Made by a program: the position numbers and the translations under genes. Positions 56,141 to 64,000 of a DNA stretch of 64,000 nt are shown here, piece after piece. Source of the DNA: Takakia lepidozioides. Lineage: Eukaryota; Plantae; Bryophyta. The notes beneath the pieces are model-generated. The model was not told where the DNA came from. It was given only the letters and a program-made list of their open reading frames with translations, and did no database searches. The number at the start of each line of letters is the position of its first letter. Position 1 is the stretch's first letter. Where the stretch lies: contig CM060731.1 in assembly GCA_030704615.1 (NCBI GenBank), positions 37,572,001 through 37,636,000 of the forward strand, written 5' to 3'.

Positions 56141-56672
56141 CATCTCAGCAGCAGGCGGCGCGAACAAAGAACTGCCTCTCTATCCAGCAAAACATGCGAG
56201 ATTCATCTCAGCTGCAGCGTGAACGAAGATCTGCCTCTCTATCCAGCAAAACATGCGAGATTCATCTCAGCTGCAGCGTGAACCAAGATCTGCCTCACTA
56301 TCCAGCAAAACATGCGAGATTCATCTCAGCTGCAGCGGGAACGAAGATCTGCCTCTCTATCCAGAAAACCATGCGAGATTCATCTCCGCTGCAGCGCGAA
56401 CCAAGATCTGCCTCTCTATCCAGCAAAACATGAGAGATTCATCTCAGCTGCAGCGTGAACCAAGATCTGCCTCTCTATCCAGCAAAACATGCGAGATTCA
56501 TCTCAGCTGCAGCGTGAACCTAGATCTGCCTCACTATCGAGCAAAACGTGCGAGATTAGGATTGAAGAGATAAAAGAAGCCAAATCGATGGAGAAGAGAC
56601 GGCTTTGCACAGAAACATCTCAGCTGCAGTGTGAACGAAGATCAGCCGCATTATCGAGCAAACCTGCGAGAT
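56141..56672. repeat. 59-bp minisatellite, about 7 tandem units plus one detached unit
   Basis: Unit CATCTCAGCTGCAGCGTGAACCAAGATCTGCCTCTCTATCCAGCAAAACATGCGAGATT starts at 56141, 56204, 56263, 56322, 56381, 56440 and 56499. A diverged unit is at about 56617. Confidence 0.95.
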
Positions 56673-57664
56673 CCGAATAACCCTAAGGTTTGAAGATTTG
56701 AAGATTATTTGCTCAGCGTGCGAGACGTGGAAGACCTAAATGGACGGAGGAAAGAATGATGCGACGAAATATGCTAACGTTCGTCCGATCGGACGAGCGA
56801 GCAGTCAGATGAACGTGGGAGGTCAACAGGGGTTGGTAGAGTGAGGGCGTACTTTACGCGTGTCATCGTCATCCGTCGCCGTCTTTGCTTTTTGTCAGGT
56901 CCCGTCGTGGGGGGTCCACGTCACCAGTTGTTGGGGTCCACGTCAGTAGGGATATTATGAGGGCCGGCGGATCGGCGCGGGGTTTCGAGCCCGGGACGTG
57001 GGGGAGCAGTAGGAAGAAGACGAAGGGGGTAAAAGGGCGATGGCGAGGCGGAGAGGGAGGGTGGGGTCCCTACTGTGCGGGGACTGGGGGCCGCTCCATT
57101 ATAAACCTGTACATCACTGGTCCATGTGTGCCTTCATGGCGGCGGCAAGCTGATTATAGAATGGAGGAGTAGGAGGAGGAGGAGGGGGGATTACGTGCTT
57201 GTCTCGGTACATGATAAGTAATCTGATTCCTTCATCAAGGGGGGGAGGGAATGGGAGGAAATAGGTATCGGGTATCGACGGCATATGTGACAGATCGCGC
57301 TGGTACATCGGCAGAGGTGTTGAGTGTATGCGAGGCACAGTAAAGGAGGGGAGGGGTGGGGTGTGCACGGGGAGTGCATCGTTTGGCGTGCTGTCTTGCA
57401 TCGAGGGACAGAATATGTTCGTGGCTGGCGGTGGCTGTGACAGTTTGTCTTCTCCGGTGTTGTTCTCTTGTTCTTGACTGGGGATGTGCCGGGACGGTGT
57501 GTCTGCCGGGCTAGTTTGTGTGAGGCCCTATTTTGGCCGAAGGTAAAAATTGCGTGAATTCTCGTCCCCCTGTATTTCTGAGGAGTGGTTCGATTTTCTT
57601 TGCATTTGATCTCTTCGGTTTTAGCGAGGACGAATAACTGCAGTGTTGGATTCCAGTTTGCGGG

Positions 57665-57667
<3 letters not shown>

Positions 57668-57700
<33 letters not shown>
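57668..57700 (+). repeat. (CT)n microsatellite in the probable 5' leader of the RING gene
   Basis: Direct reading. Confidence 0.9.
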
Positions 57701-57703
<3 letters not shown>

Positions 57704-59485
57704 GTGCCGGGTTCGTCTATTTGTGATTGCTTGTGTTGGTGCATGACGAGACGATCGTAGAGGACAGGGTAGGCTCATAGCCTTTTGAGAGAGGGAGGCA
57801 GAGGAGGCCAGAAGAAGATAACCTAGAGGCTTTGACGGTCAAGGACAGAACACGTAAGTGACGGGAGAGGTGAATTATTGGAAAGTAGAACCAGGCAATG
57901 CGCGTGGGAACAAGTCCTCTCTGCTCGAAGCCTCCTGGGTTCGTAGTTGGTCAGTGAGTTACATATATGGATCCGCAATCTGAATATGCTAGTGTCAAGG
58001 AAGCCAGACACACTGTTGGCTGGCAAGAATTTGTTCCAGAACTTACTATTTTCAAAAGAAGATGATACTCGCTCATGACAGTCTTGTTGACCAGCCGGCA
58101 GACTGGTGCAGTTCGAAGTGTATATGTTACATGCCACATACTATATTTGCTACCACGAGATGGGAAAAGGGTGTGTTCAGAGGGAAAAGTGCTTGTGGAT
58201 GTAAACAGAGATAGAAATTGCTGTTTGAATGCTCCCCATTTTTCCGCACTTGCTGAAGAGAGTTTGTTTTTAATCATTTCACGCACTGTGATTCTTACTA
58301 CCAGATGAGGAGGATGGGAAGTATAGATGGTGCTTTGCACGGGCAGGCTTGAAAGTGAACATAGAAGAAACTGCTTTTTGAATTCAAGTGTCTGGCAAGT
58401 TATTGCACAAATTGTGGGAGAGGTTTATTTTAGGTGGGGAGTGTGGGCACAATTTGTTTCATAGAAGTGGAGTCTACAGTGATTTCCACGTGTGAGATGT
58501 GATTTCTGCACATGCAAGACAAAGAGATAGAGTAGAAGGTTAATTTGGTGTCATAATCAGTGTCTGGGAGTTTACGGTACTTTTCTGCAAGATCCAAAAA
58601 GTATTTCTGATGGCCAGTTGCATGATTTTTTGAGCAGCCTGTTCAGAAATGTCCTGCATCATAGTCCTTTTACTATTCTTGATGTAAGGTGTCAGGTTCT
58701 TGGAAAGATTGCCTATGGGATCTGTTGCTCAGGTTCTTGGTAATGTGCAGTGGGGTGTTTCTTCTGTGCCTACCCAGCTGAATTGTTCAAGTCCTCTGAA
58801 AGTGTTTGTCATTTTGTCCACAGGAACTGCAAAGCGTTTCAGACGAATGCATGGAAGTTATTCAGTTCCAGCATCACATGTGGAAAGGACCTTCTGTTGT
58901 ACTTGGACTTCACTCCGAGTGTTCAGTGGGGACAACTATGTCTGGAACAGGCTCAGATGTTTAGTGCTCCCTGCAATTAAAGTTACTTTCTCTCCCCATC
59001 GGAAAATGCATGAATGGTCATTTTGTCGCGCCCAATCAAATTGTAAGCTTGGCAAGACTACCAAAGCTCTTTGATCAATTTCAACGAAGGGGGGGTTTTG
59101 TTCTGAAAAAGAATACAATTCGAAGGCTGATCATCAAGACCCAGCAGTCTTACACATTTGCTCCGCACTGCAATTAAAGAGACTCGCAAACTGATACAGT
59201 ACGAATTCTGTTTTATTGGTCTTTGTATGCTTGCAAAGGAGCACATTTGAAGGCTATGGAGAGGGCAGGTGGCTCTTTTGCAAGGTGAAGCATTATGCAA
59301 GTAATATTGACAAGGAGTTTACTTCTGAACTACTTGAGGTGCAGTTTCCCCAGTGAAAGCTAGGATGGGATTAAGTGCGGCAAAGTGAAATTAGGGCCGA
59401 GGTCCAGTGCAAGCTGGGAAAAGCTTGCCAGGAAGGTTGTTTTGCGGTGAGAGAGGAAGATAGACGGCATACATAAGCTGTCAAG

Positions 59486-62400
59486 ACGGGGGCCCTCTGC
59501 TGTGTGGCCGCAAGGCCACGCGGGTCCACTGTGAGCAATGATGGCTGGTCAACAGGACCGCATGAGCCCCACTGGCGCAGCAACAGTGGCTTTTCGCCCC
59601 CCCTCTCCAGTAATGGTTGGGAAAACAAAGCCCAGCCTGCAGATCTGGCCACCACGTCTCATACATATCAGTTGCATCGAACATCCTTGTCATCGAGCAG
59701 TAGAGGAAGTAGAAGTGGGAGTAGGGTGGGCAGTGCACGTTTTGTAGGCCACCAACATACCCCGTCTGGGAGCTTGTTCTCTCATGGTGGCAGTCCTTCT
59801 GATAGTTTTTGTACTAATGCGTGGAATCCGTTGGCATCCTCCAGTGGTTGCATCGGGGATTTCATCGCAGCTGCCTCAGGTATGAGAACTCCCTTGGTCA
59901 AGTAATGGCCTCATTGACAATCCCCTGTGAACTTTGGCTGTGACCCACTATCCAGGGCATAGTACCTGCTGCCCAAAGCTGGTAGTGGGTTTAGAGGAAG
60001 AAAGTAAGAAAAAGAGAATTATGATGAGCATGGGTGGCTCAGAGTCCCTAAGGACACAGTAGATTAACAAGAGAGAAGAGGTGGAGTAGCACAAAAACAT
60101 TTAAGATGTGCGAATGTATGGTGTATATGTACGTAGTGGAACACATGATGATTGTTTGCTAACATACACTGGTCAAAACACCAACAGCCTGGCTGGCAGG
60201 GTGAGCAGCAACTTGCATGCTAGAGACCATCATGCAGGAGTTGCTTGATTGCGAAATTCAAGTACTGGGGACTCTTAGCTCAAGAGGTGGGATGAACCGC
60301 AGATATAGTTGACCTTGTTTACTGACCTGCTTGCTATGGGTGTGTTTTTCTACTGACTGCAGATTCAACAGCGAGCCCTTCAATTACCATAAGTTCTTCC
60401 AAAGAGGTTAATATCTGTGCTTCTCTCCCTCCTCTCTCACTCCTCTTGGTCTTCCTGGATGCAATAAAATTTTGTTTCCTTCCCTCCTCTCTCTGTCTGT
60501 TTCTTCAGGCTACGGCAAACAACGTCTTATGAGTACATTCTGTCTGTTTCTTCAGTCTCCTTCCACGTCGAGGGTACATCTAAATGAACAGTGTCCTTAA
60601 GGACACCAGATAGGATTATTGTTGCTGATTTGGCATTGCCTGTAGCTTGCCCACGTCAACCGCAGGATGCCCAAGAACCCCACAGTTCAAGTTAGCATTT
60701 TCTACTGCAGCTCAGTCAAATGAGCTCTGTAGTGTGCATGGGTTTGCAACCTGCTCTTTCTGCGCAGTCGGTCTTTATGTCGTCTGTTCCCAAGTAATAT
60801 AAAGGGGTTCTGCTTTCTCTTCCATCGGTAGATGTCTGCTTTTGTTGACCTCCAAATAGATTGAAGCATCAATTATCCTCAATCTTAACTAGGACCCTCA
60901 CCATAAAAAAGTTAGCTCTAAGTCCATTTTGTAGTGACATCTAATTCCAGTGGTCTGGTTTTGCAGGGCTGTTTATCGGCCAGTCTGTCTACACTTTCCA
61001 ATACCCCGGAGTCCACACCCTCATACCCCACTGTAGAGGATTTCTCACTGGCTTCTCCAGCAGGTGCAATCCAACCTTCACCTTCTCCGTGCCACCTTAC
61101 AGGCAACTACTCATTTGTGTCCAAGCCTGCTTTCTCAGCTCCCAGTCACCCTCTCACAAGGCAGAAATCTGACAGTCGAATTCATACAGTGGGAACCAGT
61201 CGGACGCCAATCTTCGAGGGGAGGAGGTCCTTTCATTGGTCTGGGAGTAGTGGAGATTCCAGTGTGGGGGGTACCTCTGACTGGTGGTCAATGCAGACTT
61301 TCTCTGAACTGGTTGCCTCCTCGCGTCGGGAACGATTGCGGTGGACAAGTGCAAGTAGTCCATCTGATTTTGGCTGGAGTTCAGCTCGTGAGGGTATGGA
61401 GAGGGCTGCAGGCTTGCTGGCTTTGGAGAGGATTAGGGCGGGGAGCTCCCAGGCTGCCACCACCTCTGCCAGATTTGAGGTACTCCGTTTACCCCTATGA
61501 GGCCAAACCCACGTCCATAGCAGCACAAACTTGGCTTTAGGCAGCATTTAGGTTTTGATCCATTGTAATCAGGTGTCACACCAGTAAGACCAACCACATA
61601 GGCAACTTTCCAGCCTTATTTTGAACGTGACAGTGTTGGGCCCTTCTTCAGATTGTAGTGGATTGTTATTGATCATGTGGCCGGTTTGAAGACTTGTTCA
61701 CCTGACCCTCCATACTGGGGTAAGCACATACCACATGCACCGAGGATTATGGCTGGGTTTTGCAACACAGACTGACTCAGATGCTTTGGTTGGAAAATTC
61801 CATAGTATGCCAATTGTTGCCTCCTCAATTCTCATACAGAAGCTGATGGTTGCGGGAATTGATACACGCTAGTTCATCCTTTGTATTTGTTTTCAGAAGC
61901 ACCACACTCAAAGAAAATGATCTTGTGGATTTTAGCCATGTTAGATAACACTGTAATACTTTTCATGGTCTGCAAACTATGTCTGCATCAGTTTTGAGAA
62001 TTTTGAGAATGTCTTCTATCTTCATCTCTGTGTACTTGTGTCACTAGTACATTCTTCCCCTTGCAGTTTGGATGGTTGAGCTGGGTCACCAGAGCATTGT
62101 ACATCACCTCCAGTGGGAGAGTCGGATTTAGCGGTCTAGTTCCAGTGACCTCCTCCCCCATTCCTCCTCACTGCCAAAGACAAAAACAAGCTGACTGGGT
62201 GAATTACCTCGTTCTTCAAGGGATGACTTTAAAGGATGACTGGATTGTAGCTGCAAAGGTGCCCATTTACTCGATCTGACAACAAGCAGTGGTCGCTGAG
62301 TGGGCATTGGAGTGACATGTATGTATTGTCAGGGAGATCCCGAATGTCTGCTGTGCTTCTTTGTCGACATGTCCTCTCAACACAGTACTCCAGATTTTCC

Positions 62401-63091
62401 TTTCATTGATTTTAACGTTGCACTTCAAACCTTGCAGATTTGTGGTGTGTGTTCTCGGTCACTGACACAACGATCACCCTGGAGCTCCACACGAATGATC
62501 GGCAGTGCCGATTGCAGTGTGGTGGGAGTCCTGGTTTGTGGCCATGTGTACCATGCCGAGTGCCTTGAACAAGCTACACCAGAATCCCTTAGGCAAGACC
62601 CTCCCTGTCCACAGTGTGGGGCCTCTGAAAGGGCTGCAAAGGTTGTGAACACCCTGGAGTCTGTAACCCTTACAAAAGGAGGGGCAAGAGGGAACGGTTC
62701 CCTGGCTCCTACAAGCTCTAGAAACAAGCTTTCTAGAATTGGAGTTGTGAACGATGACATGTCTGGGCCTGAGTTCTGTTTTCCAGGGGCAGGGCTGCAA
62801 GTGAGTGTGAAAGGGGTTCAGCTATGTGAGGGAGAAAAGCCGAGGGCACAGCTACCCCCCTCTCCAGCTCCCTCTCACAGTGAGCGACTATTTTTAAGTA
62901 AATCTCTATCACGAAAGCAGTTCTCTTTCAGGAATCGGTCAATAAGGGAATCCAACAGTGGTACTGGGTGGAAAAAACCGAGTTCTCCTGTACGCGTGTC
63001 TCCAGACAACTCTTCTGTGGAAGATTCCACATCTCAACCTCCATCAAAGAAAGGCAAGTCAAGCTCTTTCAGATTATTGAAAAAGCGCTAA
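59486..63091 (+). CDS. RING-H2 finger protein (MGxxCCVAAR / HEPxWR family), predicted ACG start
   Basis: Exons 59486-59879, 60363-60406, a possible microexon 60556-60573, 60967-61479 and 62438-63091. Motifs: (M)GALCCVAARP, GPHEPHWRSNSGFSPP, DWWSMQTFSELVASSRRER, and the RING CGVC...VVGVLVCGHVYHAECLEQATPE...DPPCPQC. Confidence 0.85.
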
Positions 63092-64000
63092 GCATTGGAC
63101 CCCTCTCGGTGTATATGCAAAGGACTAGCAGCAATGTATAATCTGTGAAGAGTTGGTTGCTGGGAGTACTTTCACTGCAGGTTTGGCATTCTGCTTGGAC
63201 GGGCGTTGGACCTCATGTTGGATACTCGGGTCTGTAGGATTGTAACACGCGTTGTGTCTACACTGGTTCGGCTGTTGGAATTTCTGGAGGAGAGGTGCCC
63301 AATGTTGACCCAGCAAGCATTTTGGCAGCCGAAAGTCCCAGCAGAGGAATGTCTGAGAAAGGGAGAGAAATGGGGAGAGGTTCTTGTTCGAAGCTAATTT
63401 TCTTTCTTATATGTATCAAGGAGTGTTCTTTGCTTGGCACAGCATCCTCAGGGTCATATTACGAATATACCCATTTCAAAAGTCTTGGGTTAGTCCCTTT
63501 TACCGGTAAACTTCTAGGTTGAAGTGTTTGCCGCCCCTAATTAACCAGCCATTTAACTGCTGGTGAATGTGTGAACTGGACCTGATGCTTGTGTACTATT
63601 CCTTGGGTCCCAAACCCAGGTGGTAGCAGGCGACGACTAATGCTCTCACATGTCGTGGTGTGCTAGAAAATCGCAGCAACAGAGTTGATTCTTCTTCCTG
63701 TGGATACCTGGAACACTGAGGCACTCCATTTTTAGGGTCATAGAATCTCCTAGTAGATAAACTGACGGGCAGCATTTCTGGGCCTTAAGATAGGCCTATA
63801 ACAATTTTGAGTGCTCTTGTAAGCCTTACATAGAATAGGCGAAATAAATTTTGGCACTCAAAACAGAAGAAAAAGATGGGGGTCAAACTTGCCACCAGGA
63901 AGACCACCATTCTTTCATATTTCCTCTGTAAGTACTGACTCTGACCAAGCAGACTCGACTGTATCATATACTCTTTACCTTGTAAATTTCATCTTGCAGC

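What the first reader, a model, noticed from the sequence alone, without database searches (positions are those of the whole stretch)
59474..59520. RING-H2 gene appears to initiate at ACG, not ATG
Seen: the sequence reads AAG ACG GGG GCC CTC TGC TGT GTG GCC GCA AGG, i.e. (T/M)GALCCVAAR. The ACG at 59486 has A at -3 and G at +4. An in-frame TAA lies 12 nt upstream (59474). The first in-frame ATG in the spliced model is not reached until WWSMQ at about 61291, and everything downstream is intact. Knowledge, recalled rather than searched: plant members of this family begin MG-x-(x)-CCVAAR, a Gly2 myristoylation plus Cys S-acylation-type membrane anchor that works only if the Gly directly follows the initiator. 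Inference: non-AUG initiation yields a lipid-anchored E3 ligase at a throttled level, and standard annotation would miss about 250 N-terminal residues. Alternatives are a private ATG>ACG mutation, an assembly error, or (speculatively) C-to-U editing of ACG to AUG as in organelles.
Basis: partly seen in the sequence, partly recalled or inferred. Interest (0 to 1): 0.8.

Follow-up and report, generated by a model that had tools for sequence, protein, structure and literature searches.

The report
Ancient ACG start codon, plant RING-H2 gene
This bryophyte gene for a probably lipid-anchored RING-H2 ubiquitin ligase has ACG where its start codon should be, and the same ACG sits at that spot in mosses, a liverwort, a clubmoss and flowering plants, so it looks like a very old deliberate weak start that gene annotation routinely gets wrong.

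Summary
TAA lies at 59474-76 and AAG ACG GGG at 59483-91, followed by an open frame reading T-GALCCVAAR. The first in-frame ATG is at 61291.

Spliced RNA contigs from two independent studies run colinear through the ACG. They show no splice at AAG|ACG and no C-to-U change. They define a five-exon gene with a leader of at least 1150 nt carrying 21 upstream AUGs.

The ACG is not private. DNA from nine other lineages has exactly AAR-ACG-GG at the homologous codon: three unnamed bryophyte-like contig sets, Sphagnum chr2-type, Ceratodon, Diphasiastrum, Amborella, Colocasia and Striga. ACG makes up only 12% of the other Thr codons in the same exons.

Similarity between distant loci starts sharply at AAG-AYG-GG. 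Codons 2-131 are under purifying selection (dN/dS 0.09-0.30, dS above 1).

Across 73 distinct relatives the position holds only T (50), M (20) or I (3); every T checked in DNA is ACG. ATG forms are scattered tips, for example the Sphagnum chr8 paralog.

Published gene models are truncated, extended or fused.

A 6-7 bp hairpin about 14 nt downstream is kept in 12 of 12 loci.

Verdict: a conserved non-AUG (ACG) initiator, with no direct translation evidence here. It is a new member of a known kind. I found no earlier report, and this scan had not noted it before on other DNA.

The parts
57055..57542 (+). Exon 1, all 5' leader. The 5' end is the start of the longest RNA contig, so the true transcription start may lie further upstream.
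   Evidence: X5 record 9 covers 57055-57540 and X6 record 16 covers 57383-57540. Both join to 58822 across a GT..AG intron (cut +2).
57543..58823 (+). Intron 1 (GT..AG). It holds a (TC)17 microsatellite at 57667-57700.
   Evidence: joint 57540>58822, seen in two RNA runs. for the microsatellite.
58824..59879 (+). Exon 2. Bases 58824-59485 are leader; coding starts at 59486.
   Evidence: both RNA contigs are colinear with the genome over 58822-59876/79. X6 shows 0 other letters; X5 shows 1, at 59017.
59474..59476 (+). In-frame TAA four codons upstream of the ACG.
59483..59490 (+). Initiation context AAG-ACG-GG (A at -3, G at +4 and +5). The proposed initiator ACG is at 59486-59488.
   Evidence: AAR-ACG-GG is invariant in 10 Thr-type loci, and the Sphagnum paralog has AAG-ATG-GG.
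59504..59519 (+). Hairpin GUGGCC-GCAA-GGCCAC, encoded by V-A-A-R-P. The stem extends to 59502-59521 in the window. Its base lies 14-15 nt after the ACG.
   Evidence: MFE fold, z = -2.3. (7 bp paired in 12 of 12 loci, wobble changes only). (RNAalifold predicts it independently; no compensatory pairs).
59538..59747 (+). The first AUGs downstream of the ACG (59538 and 59541) are in the +1 frame and open a 69-codon overlapping ORF.
60363..60406 (+). Exon 3 (44 nt).
   Evidence: joints 59876>60360 and 60404>60965 in X5 and X6.
60967..61479 (+). Exon 4. It contains the first in-frame ATG, at 61291-61293.
   Evidence: joints.
62438..63091 (+). Exon 5 coding part: the RING-H2 finger (ligand Cys/His within 62441-62617) and a C-terminal tail. 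Stop TAA is at 63089-63091.
   Evidence: joint 61477>62436 (X6). (RING Pfam hits below cut-off). (all eight ligands invariant in 8 relatives).

Best explanation
The ACG at 59486 is the real and, in this bryophyte, the only usable initiation codon of a RING-H2 gene.

Inferred mechanism: scanning 40S subunits pause at the ACG because it sits in an optimal context (A-3, G+4). A stable GC-rich hairpin whose base lies about 14 nt downstream may also hold them there. Initiator Met-tRNA pairs with the near-cognate codon, so the protein starts Met-Gly-Ala-Leu-Cys-Cys. Removing the Met exposes Gly2 for N-myristoylation, and Cys5/Cys6 can be S-acylated. The result would be a membrane-anchored E3 ligase.

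Output should be low, because ACG is a weak start and the leader of at least 1150 nt carries 21 upstream AUGs. Ribosomes that miss the ACG meet out-of-frame AUGs first, so no N-terminally truncated protein is expected in this species.

Shown here: the codon, its context and its presence in mature mRNA; its conservation at nucleotide level across land plants; purifying selection on the exon starting at the ACG; and conservation of the hairpin. Inferred: actual initiation at the ACG, Met as first residue, lipidation, low output, and a functional role for the hairpin.

The distribution on the tree suggests that ACG is ancestral for land plants and that ATG arose repeatedly from it by C-to-T change. 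The tree is unrooted, so this direction is not proven.
For: - RNA: spliced contigs from two studies carry the ACG exon colinear with the genome, with no joint at 59485/59486 and no other letter at 59487. X5 has its own SNPs elsewhere, so it is a different individual.
- Reading frame: TAA lies 4 codons upstream and there is no in-frame ATG for 254 codons.
- Homologous codon: it is ACG, preceded by AAR and followed by GG, in L001-4, L005-8/L012 (Sphagnum fallax chr2 type), L009, Ceratodon, Diphasiastrum, Striga, Colocasia, Amborella and the spliced RNA contig L021.
- Codon usage: ACG is 12% of the other Thr codons in these exons, and neighbouring codons vary at third positions.
- Onset of conservation: similarity between distant loci begins at AAG-AYG-GG, and upstream sequence is unalignable.
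- Selection: dN/dS is 0.09-0.30 with dS above 1 over codons 2-131.
- States at the position: only T (50), M (20) and I (3) occur among distinct relatives. Every T checked in DNA is ACG; the Ile codons were not checked.
- In-frame stops lie within 5 codons upstream in Striga and Colocasia as well.
- Ceratodon and Striga have AAA before the ACG, so no conserved AG acceptor exists there.
- Annotation: 72 of 120 angiosperm models start at in-frame Met23. Others are extended upstream or fused to neighbouring genes.
- Hairpin: kept in 12 of 12 loci.
- Background: ACG ranks among the best near-cognate starts in plants (PMC7605272).
Against: - No ribosome-profiling, N-terminomic or reporter evidence could be examined, so initiation at the ACG is inferred.
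- Twenty-one upstream AUGs make scanning to a weak codon look inefficient.
- Contigs cannot exclude a rare edited or alternatively spliced transcript, or a shorter transcript from a downstream start site.
- The hairpin shows no compensatory changes, and its conservation is confounded with the conserved peptide VAARP.
- In Ceratodon, Physcomitrium and a relative, the in-frame region upstream of the ACG is open, has an ATG and shows some amino-acid similarity. An AUG-started longer form is therefore possible in that moss clade.
- The RING hits are all below Pfam's curated cut-offs.
Confidence: 0.75

Rival explanations
1. A minority transcript supplies a true AUG. This could happen through C-to-U editing of ACG, through an alternative upstream exon spliced in frame, or through an AT-AC intron ending at AC|G that joins an exon ending in AT. 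Only that form would be translated.
For: Contigs drop rare variants (tool note). AAG before the ACG could serve as an AG acceptor in most species. ACG-to-AUG editing is well known in plant organelles (general knowledge).
Against: - Both RNA contigs are colinear and read C at 59487.
- The spliced RNA contig L021 also reads ACG, and nine Logan transcript ORFs begin at the downstream GTG, which implies there is no ATG in those contigs.
- Ceratodon and Striga have AAA, so the acceptor is not conserved.
- No U12-type branch-site motif is visible in the 30 nt upstream.
- Cytosolic C-to-U editing of nuclear mRNAs is not an established plant mechanism (general knowledge).
Confidence: 0.07
2. The Thr is an ordinary internal residue. 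Translation starts further upstream at an AUG or another near-cognate codon, as several published gene models assume, and the GxxCC motif is not N-terminal.
For: Ceratodon, Physcomitrium, Riccia and Sphagnum chr2 models start at upstream in-frame ATGs. The Ceratodon and Physcomitrium extensions share roughly 45% of residues by eye. L009 and Ceratodon have an in-frame ATG 43 and 47 codons upstream.
Against: - This is impossible in the window, where TAA lies at -4. It is equally impossible in Striga and Colocasia (TGA at -5) and in Amborella (stop at -20 with no ATG).
- The upstream sequences are unrelated between distant lineages, while similarity begins at AAG-ACG.
- An internal Thr would not stay ACG in 10 of 10 lineages, and it would not be replaced only by Met or Ile.
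Confidence: 0.05
3. The long N-terminal part is not made into stable protein in this species. The functional product starts at Met255 (61291) or is absent, and the ACG copy is a decaying or regulatory remnant.
For: The heavy upstream-AUG load and the weak start codon predict very little full-length protein. Marchantia paleacea and one Diphasiastrum model are annotated from downstream Met residues.
Against: - dN/dS is 0.09 against the nearest relative and 0.17-0.22 against the others over codons 2-131, with no frameshifts or stops in any lineage.
- At least six out-of-frame AUGs lie between the ACG and exon 3 alone, well before Met255, so scanning would not reach Met255.
- Met255 lies inside a conserved block.
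Confidence: 0.05

Closest known systems
AGAMOUS (Arabidopsis), a main ORF initiated at ACG (Riechmann et al. 1999, cited in PMC6380273)
   Same: It is a plant nuclear gene whose only productive start is an ACG in good context, and the ACG is conserved in orthologs.
   Different: AGAMOUS is a MADS transcription factor with no lipid-anchor logic. As far as I know, its ACG is reported as conserved over a much narrower range. Here the ACG spans bryophytes to angiosperms.
Conserved non-AUG 5'-extended main ORFs of Arabidopsis (van der Horst et al. 2019, PMC6380273), e.g. AT5G36250 with CUG in Brassicales and ACG elsewhere; also FCA with CUG (Simpson et al. 2010)
   Same: The signature is the same: an in-frame conserved coding region upstream of the annotated AUG that begins at a near-cognate codon in good context. 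Angiosperm members of this family fit that pattern exactly, with 22 conserved codons before Met23.
   Different: I could not read that paper's table or supplements, so I cannot say whether this family is listed. The only Brassicaceae members I saw (Raphanus) are ATG-type. In the window's lineage there is no downstream in-frame AUG for 254 codons, so the ACG is obligatory and not an optional extension.
GDP-L-galactose phosphorylase uORF initiated at ACG (Laing et al. 2015, cited in PMC6380273)
   Same: An ACG start kept over very long plant evolutionary distances, apparently because a weak start is itself the selected property.
   Different: That case is a regulatory upstream ORF. This one is the main protein-coding ORF.
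N-myristoylated plant RING E3 ligases such as LOG2/LUL and RGLG (RGLG: PMC9224344, seen)
   Same: A RING E3 with an M-G N-terminus predicted to anchor it to membranes.
   Different: Those use ordinary AUG starts, and I have no evidence that they are homologous outside the RING finger. This family has no Pfam family of its own and no characterised member that I could find.
Kozak's downstream-hairpin effect (Kozak 1990, from memory): a hairpin about 14 nt after a weak start codon raises initiation
   Same: A stable GC hairpin whose base lies 14-15 nt after the ACG, conserved in all 12 loci.
   Different: That effect was shown with artificial constructs in animal systems. Here the function is untested, and the sequence also encodes a conserved peptide.

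Membership tests
Non-AUG (near-cognate) initiated main ORF | No in-frame AUG between the nearest upstream stop and the conserved coding region | tested here: met
   TAA at -4 codons and first in-frame ATG at codon 255. The same holds in Striga, Colocasia, Amborella, Diphasiastrum, L001, L005 and L021.
Non-AUG (near-cognate) initiated main ORF | Coding-type conservation (purifying selection) begins at the near-cognate codon | tested here: met
   Alignments A1 and A2 show similarity starting at AAG-AYG-GG. dN/dS is 0.09-0.30 over codons 2-131.
Non-AUG (near-cognate) initiated main ORF | The near-cognate codon and a strong context are conserved at nucleotide level in orthologs | tested here: met
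   ACG in 10 of 10 lineages with AAR before and GG after it. Only T, M or I occurs at this position in 73 distinct relatives.
Non-AUG (near-cognate) initiated main ORF | The codon is present unaltered in mature mRNA (no splice or edit creating an AUG) | tested here: met
   Two RNA contig sets from different studies and RNA contig L021. Contigs cannot exclude rare variants.
Non-AUG (near-cognate) initiated main ORF | Ribosomes initiate there (initiation-site profiling, N-terminal peptide or reporter) | not testable with these tools
   No ribosome-profiling or proteomic data were reachable. The supplements of PMC7605272 and PMC6380273 are not held.
RING-H2 E3 ubiquitin ligase | Eight zinc ligands in the order C-x2-C ... 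C-x-H-x2-H-x2-C ... C-x2-C | tested here: met
   All eight are invariant in the window and 7 relatives from liverwort to Amborella.
RING-H2 E3 ubiquitin ligase | Match to a curated RING profile above its cut-off | tested here: not met
   The best hits are zf-RING_5 at 23.2 bits (cut-off 27.9) and zf-rbx1 at 22.8 bits (cut-off 31). Full-length relatives also fall below the cut-offs. The finger has a long insert between the first two ligand pairs.
RING-H2 E3 ubiquitin ligase | E2-dependent ubiquitin ligase activity | not testable with these tools
   No characterised member was found in the literature searches.
N-myristoylated, S-acylated membrane-anchored protein | Gly directly after the initiator, a small uncharged residue at position 6, and nearby Cys for S-acylation | tested here: met
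   If ACG initiates, the N-terminus reads M-G-A-L-C-C-V. G-x-x-C-C is kept in all T-, M- and I-type relatives. The rule itself is general knowledge of NMT substrates; no predictor was run.
N-myristoylated, S-acylated membrane-anchored protein | Demonstrated lipid modification or membrane localisation | not testable with these tools
   None available.

The most novel reading that the evidence does not exclude
A land-plant RING-H2 ligase has depended on a single ACG initiator for roughly 450-500 million years. Initiation is assisted by a conserved GC hairpin with a four-base G-C-N-A loop placed about 14 nt downstream. Selection actively keeps the start weak, even though one C-to-T transition would make it AUG. 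That switch has happened repeatedly, and in several cases beside a second copy of the gene. In angiosperms an added in-frame Met23 turns the same device into a switch between a lipid-anchored and a soluble isoform. This would be one of the oldest obligatory non-AUG main-ORF starts known in any eukaryote, and a natural example of hairpin-assisted near-cognate initiation.
Probability: 0.35. Interest if true: 0.8.

Novelty: new member of a known kind. Interest (0 to 1): 0.65.

Why it matters
**Misannotation.** The gene is annotated wrongly in most plant genomes I sampled. Of the 120 best angiosperm models, 72 start at Met23 and so lose the predicted lipid anchor. Others are extended upstream or fused to neighbouring genes. 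Any localisation or function study based on those models would use the wrong protein.

**Evolution of weak starts.** The case shows that a weak start codon can itself be the conserved character over the whole history of land plants. The natural ACG/ATG paralog pair in Sphagnum (chr2 versus chr8), with alignable leaders, is a ready-made comparison.

**A testable hairpin.** The case offers a compact natural test of whether downstream structure helps near-cognate initiation in plants.

**Link to lipid anchoring.** It ties translational control to N-terminal lipid anchoring, because only initiation exactly at the ACG puts Gly in second position.

Tried and rejected
- **Upstream ATG exon spliced at AAG|ACG:** rejected. 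The RNA contigs are colinear there, and Ceratodon and Striga have AAA.
- **AT-AC intron ending at AC|G:** rejected for the same reason, and no branch-site motif is present.
- **Private mutation or assembly error:** rejected. Independent samples of the species and nine other lineages all carry the ACG.
- **Pseudogene:** rejected by dN/dS.
- **Known RNA element in the leader or exon:** no Rfam match at gathering score over 56500-64000.
- **Covariation support for the hairpin:** sought but not found. Only wobble-compatible single changes occur. An association between ACG-type starts and retention of VA[AS]RP (47 of 50 versus 13 of 20, p = 0.004) is not corrected for phylogeny, so I treat it as a hint only.
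- **Literature:** five full-text searches that ran found nothing on an ACG start in this family, and one search found no lipidation data on it. One search located van der Horst 2019. That paper's table and the supplements of both key papers are not held, and Vaughn et al. 2012 is not held.
- **Earlier notes of this scan:** two lie 25 kb beyond the window and are unrelated. A word search gave nothing.
- **Spliced model:** the joined model was not sent to any search or fold tool. Exons were searched one by one by reference. A joined reading was made only inside a local script, to count codons and upstream AUGs.
Full report
**1. The observation**

- TAA lies at 59474-59476, followed by GCT GTC AAG.
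- ACG is at 59486-59488, followed by GGG GCC CTC TGC TGT GTG GCC GCA AGG.
- The frame stays open to a GT donor at 59880.
- A is at -3 and G at +4.
- The first in-frame ATG of the spliced gene is at 61291-61293, codon 255.

**2. Gene model from RNA**

One reads search found two RNA-like runs of the same species from different studies, X5 and X6, plus the DNA runs the assembly probably came from. I laid them on 56900-62899. Both RNA runs show GT..AG joints, which give this model:
- exon 1: at least 57055-57542
- exon 2: 58824-59879
- exon 3: 60363-60406
- exon 4: 60967-61479
- exon 5: from 62438, with the stop at 63089-63091

The exon that holds the ACG is colinear with the genome for 662 nt upstream of the ACG. 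No joint occurs at 59485/59486. No run, RNA or DNA, shows another letter at 59487. X5 carries its own differences at 57110, 59017, 62818 and 62848, so it is a different individual that still has ACG.

This removes three alternatives: assembly error, private mutation, and a major ATG-bearing exon spliced in. Contigs cannot exclude rare variants.

The mature leader is at least 1150 nt long and holds 21 upstream AUGs. The last upstream ORF ends 97 nt before the ACG. The first AUGs after the ACG (59538, 59541) are in the +1 frame.

The joined model (534 codons) was computed only in a local script.

**3. The ACG is shared by many lineages**

A word search with the 131-residue first coding exon returned exon-sized ORFs from other assemblies. 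Some read K-T-G-S-L-C-C and others K-M-G-S-L-C-C. I fetched their DNA, and the DNA of annotated relatives.

The codon is exactly ACG, preceded by AAG or AAA and followed by GG, in these loci:

| Locus | Source |
|---|---|
| L001-4 | unnamed assemblies |
| L005-8, L012 | identical in this region to the Sphagnum fallax chr2 model BDL97_02G027800 |
| L009 | unnamed moss-like contig |
| L016 | Ceratodon purpureus |
| L017 | Diphasiastrum complanatum |
| L018 | Striga hermonthica |
| L019 | Colocasia esculenta |
| L020 | Amborella trichopoda, 22 codons upstream of the annotated ATG |
| L021 | spliced RNA contig, unnamed source |

The Sphagnum chr8 paralog (L010, L011, L013-15) has AAG ATG GGG. Its leader is otherwise alignable with that of the chr2 copy.

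At protein level the Thr form also occurs in Physcomitrium patens, the liverwort Riccia sorocarpa, Prunus, Cinnamomum and many other angiosperms.

By exon similarity, the window's own species is nearest to Riccia, Marchantia and Sphagnum.

**4. It behaves as a start codon, not as a threonine**

- ACG is only 7 of 59 (12%) of the other Thr codons in the same ten exons, yet it is 10 of 10 at this position. Neighbouring codons (Gly2, Ser3, Leu4, Cys5, Ala8, Ala9, Pro11) all vary at the third position.
- Among 73 distinct relatives the position holds T (50), M (20) or I (3) and nothing else. Met is AUG, every Thr checked in DNA is ACG, and any Ile codon (AUH) is one base from AUG. I did not check the Ile codons in DNA.
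- Nucleotide similarity between distant loci begins abruptly at AAG-AYG-GG. Upstream sequence cannot be aligned.
- Codons 2-131 show dN/dS of 0.09-0.30 with dS above 1 between distant ACG lineages. No stops or frameshifts occur.
- In-frame stops lie within five codons upstream in the window, Striga and Colocasia. Most other lineages have no in-frame ATG before the next upstream stop.
- Ceratodon and Striga have AAA before the ACG, so a conserved AG splice acceptor at that point is excluded.

**5. History on the tree**

A 43-row tree broadly follows the species tree: bryophytes and lycophytes on one side, then gymnosperm, then angiosperms. ATG forms are scattered tips:
- Sphagnum chr8
- one Diphasiastrum paralog
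- Selaginella
- Cryptomeria
- Acorus
- one Protea paralog
- Actinidia
- Cucumis
- Raphanus

At least 9 ACG/ATG changes are needed. The tree is unrooted, and several lycophyte rows sit on long branches, so the direction of change is an inference.

I favour ACG as ancestral. ACG to ATG is a single common transition, whereas loss of an AUG should usually be harmful. On that reading selection has kept the weak codon in most lineages.

**6. Consequences for annotation**

I took the 120 best hits to the Amborella protein:
- 72 models begin M-G-P-x-E-P-Y-W. This is in-frame Met23, 22 conserved codons too late.
- 23 read through the K-T-G-S-L-C-C motif from spurious upstream starts or from fusions with neighbouring genes.
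- 9 contig ORFs start at the GTG of the Val codon.
- 2 have Ile at the position.
- 4 truly start M-G-S-(L/F)-C-C.

Bryophyte models are likewise extended (Ceratodon, Physcomitrium, Riccia, Sphagnum chr2) or truncated (Marchantia paleacea). This inconsistency is what one expects when the true start is not AUG.

**7. Likely mechanism**

*Shown.* The context is optimal. A hairpin GUGGCY-GCNA-GGCCRC occupies 59504-59519. Its base lies 14-15 nt after the ACG. It is paired in 12 of 12 loci, with only wobble-compatible changes. RNAalifold predicts it independently.

No compensatory change exists, and the same bases encode the conserved peptide V-A-A-R-P. The RNA-level role is therefore a hypothesis. 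Val is always GTG and Arg always AGG. The peptide motif is retained more often in ACG-type than in ATG-type sequences (not corrected for phylogeny). Both points are hints only.

*Inferred from general knowledge.* Near-cognate codons are read by initiator Met-tRNA. Met-Gly is processed to expose Gly2 for N-myristoyltransferase. Cys5 and Cys6 are then candidates for S-acylation.

ACG and CUG are the most used near-cognate starts in plants (PMC7605272).

In bryophytes, ribosomes that skip the ACG meet out-of-frame AUGs first. In angiosperms an in-frame Met23 follows at +67. A weak-context out-of-frame AUG lies at +35 in Amborella and Colocasia. Leaky scanning could therefore give a second isoform without the anchor.

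**8. The protein**

The C-terminal exon carries all eight RING-H2 ligands, and they are invariant from liverwort to Amborella. All Pfam RING matches fall below the curated cut-offs, both for the window and for full-length relatives. No other domain is detected. I found no characterised member of the family.

**9. Comparison with what is known, and novelty**

Non-AUG main-ORF starts are established in plants. Examples are AGAMOUS with ACG, FCA with CUG, and the conserved 5'-extended ORFs of van der Horst et al. 2019, PMC6380273. This case is a new member of that kind.

Its distinguishing points are the depth of conservation (bryophytes to angiosperms), the absence of any alternative in-frame AUG in the bryophyte genes, the dependence of a lipid-anchor motif on the exact start position, and the conserved downstream hairpin.

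Full-text searches found no paper on this family's start codon. The table and supplements of the most relevant papers could not be read. A prior listing, for instance as one row of a supplementary table, cannot be excluded.

**10. Limits**

- There is no direct evidence of translation, lipidation or ligase activity.
- The organisms behind several contigs are unknown.
- Some members of the sampled set are paralogs.

Noticed in passing
window 56158-56557: A tandem array of a 59-bp unit, 6.8 copies with 93% matches, about 500 bp upstream of the first RNA-supported base of the gene.
   Followed up: partly
window 57667-57700: A (TC)17 microsatellite inside intron 1. DNA contigs break there.
   Followed up: no
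window 60507-60545: A short element in intron 3 with enormous summed depth: about 126,000 in DNA contigs, and also high in the RNA contigs and in a plant metagenome. It has hundreds of different flanks, so it is a very high-copy dispersed repeat.
   Followed up: no
window 59538-59747, and the same region of L001, L005, L009, L010, L013 and L016-L021: The +1 frame stays open in every locus from the first AUG after the start codon. Its length is 63-101 codons in the ACG loci and 37 in the Sphagnum ATG copy. It ends at about +240 to +260 in most ACG loci. This may be a by-product of the Ser/Arg-rich main frame. Overall dS is high, so I saw no sign of dual coding.
   Followed up: partly
L018 3514-3519 (Striga); L019 (Colocasia) at the same place: Striga has a minimal in-frame AUG-UGA 'start-stop' 18 nt upstream of the ACG. 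Colocasia has GTG-TGA at the same place, and TGA AAG ATA GCT AAR ACG is shared by both.
   Followed up: no
L016 3001-3141 (Ceratodon); proteins P0221 and P0222 (Physcomitrium): In this moss clade the in-frame region upstream of the ACG is open for 47-57 codons, contains an ATG, and shows partial amino-acid similarity between species. A longer AUG-started isoform may exist there.
   Followed up: partly
proteins P0045 (Olea), P0149 (Musa), P0204 (Zingiber): Ile stands at the start position (A-K-I-G-S/A-L-C-C), so the codon is one base from AUG at its third position. The DNA was not fetched.
   Followed up: no
proteins P0133, P0134, P0138, P0144 (Logan transcripts, unnamed taxon): An in-frame AUG eight codons upstream of the conserved K-T-G-S-L gives a new N-terminus that again begins M-G.
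   Followed up: no
proteins P0047 (Linum), P0172 (Reevesia), P0233 (Perilla): In these gene models the RING gene is fused to an upstream neighbour. P0047 is named for a DnaJ chaperone, and the other two carry methyltransferase Pfam domains. The likely cause is that no ATG was found at the true start.
   Followed up: no
window 59933-60022: In the DNA run and in both RNA-like runs, a second contig matches this part of intron 2 at about 92% identity with a 1-base deletion. A diverged copy of this stretch therefore exists elsewhere in the genome.
   Followed up: no
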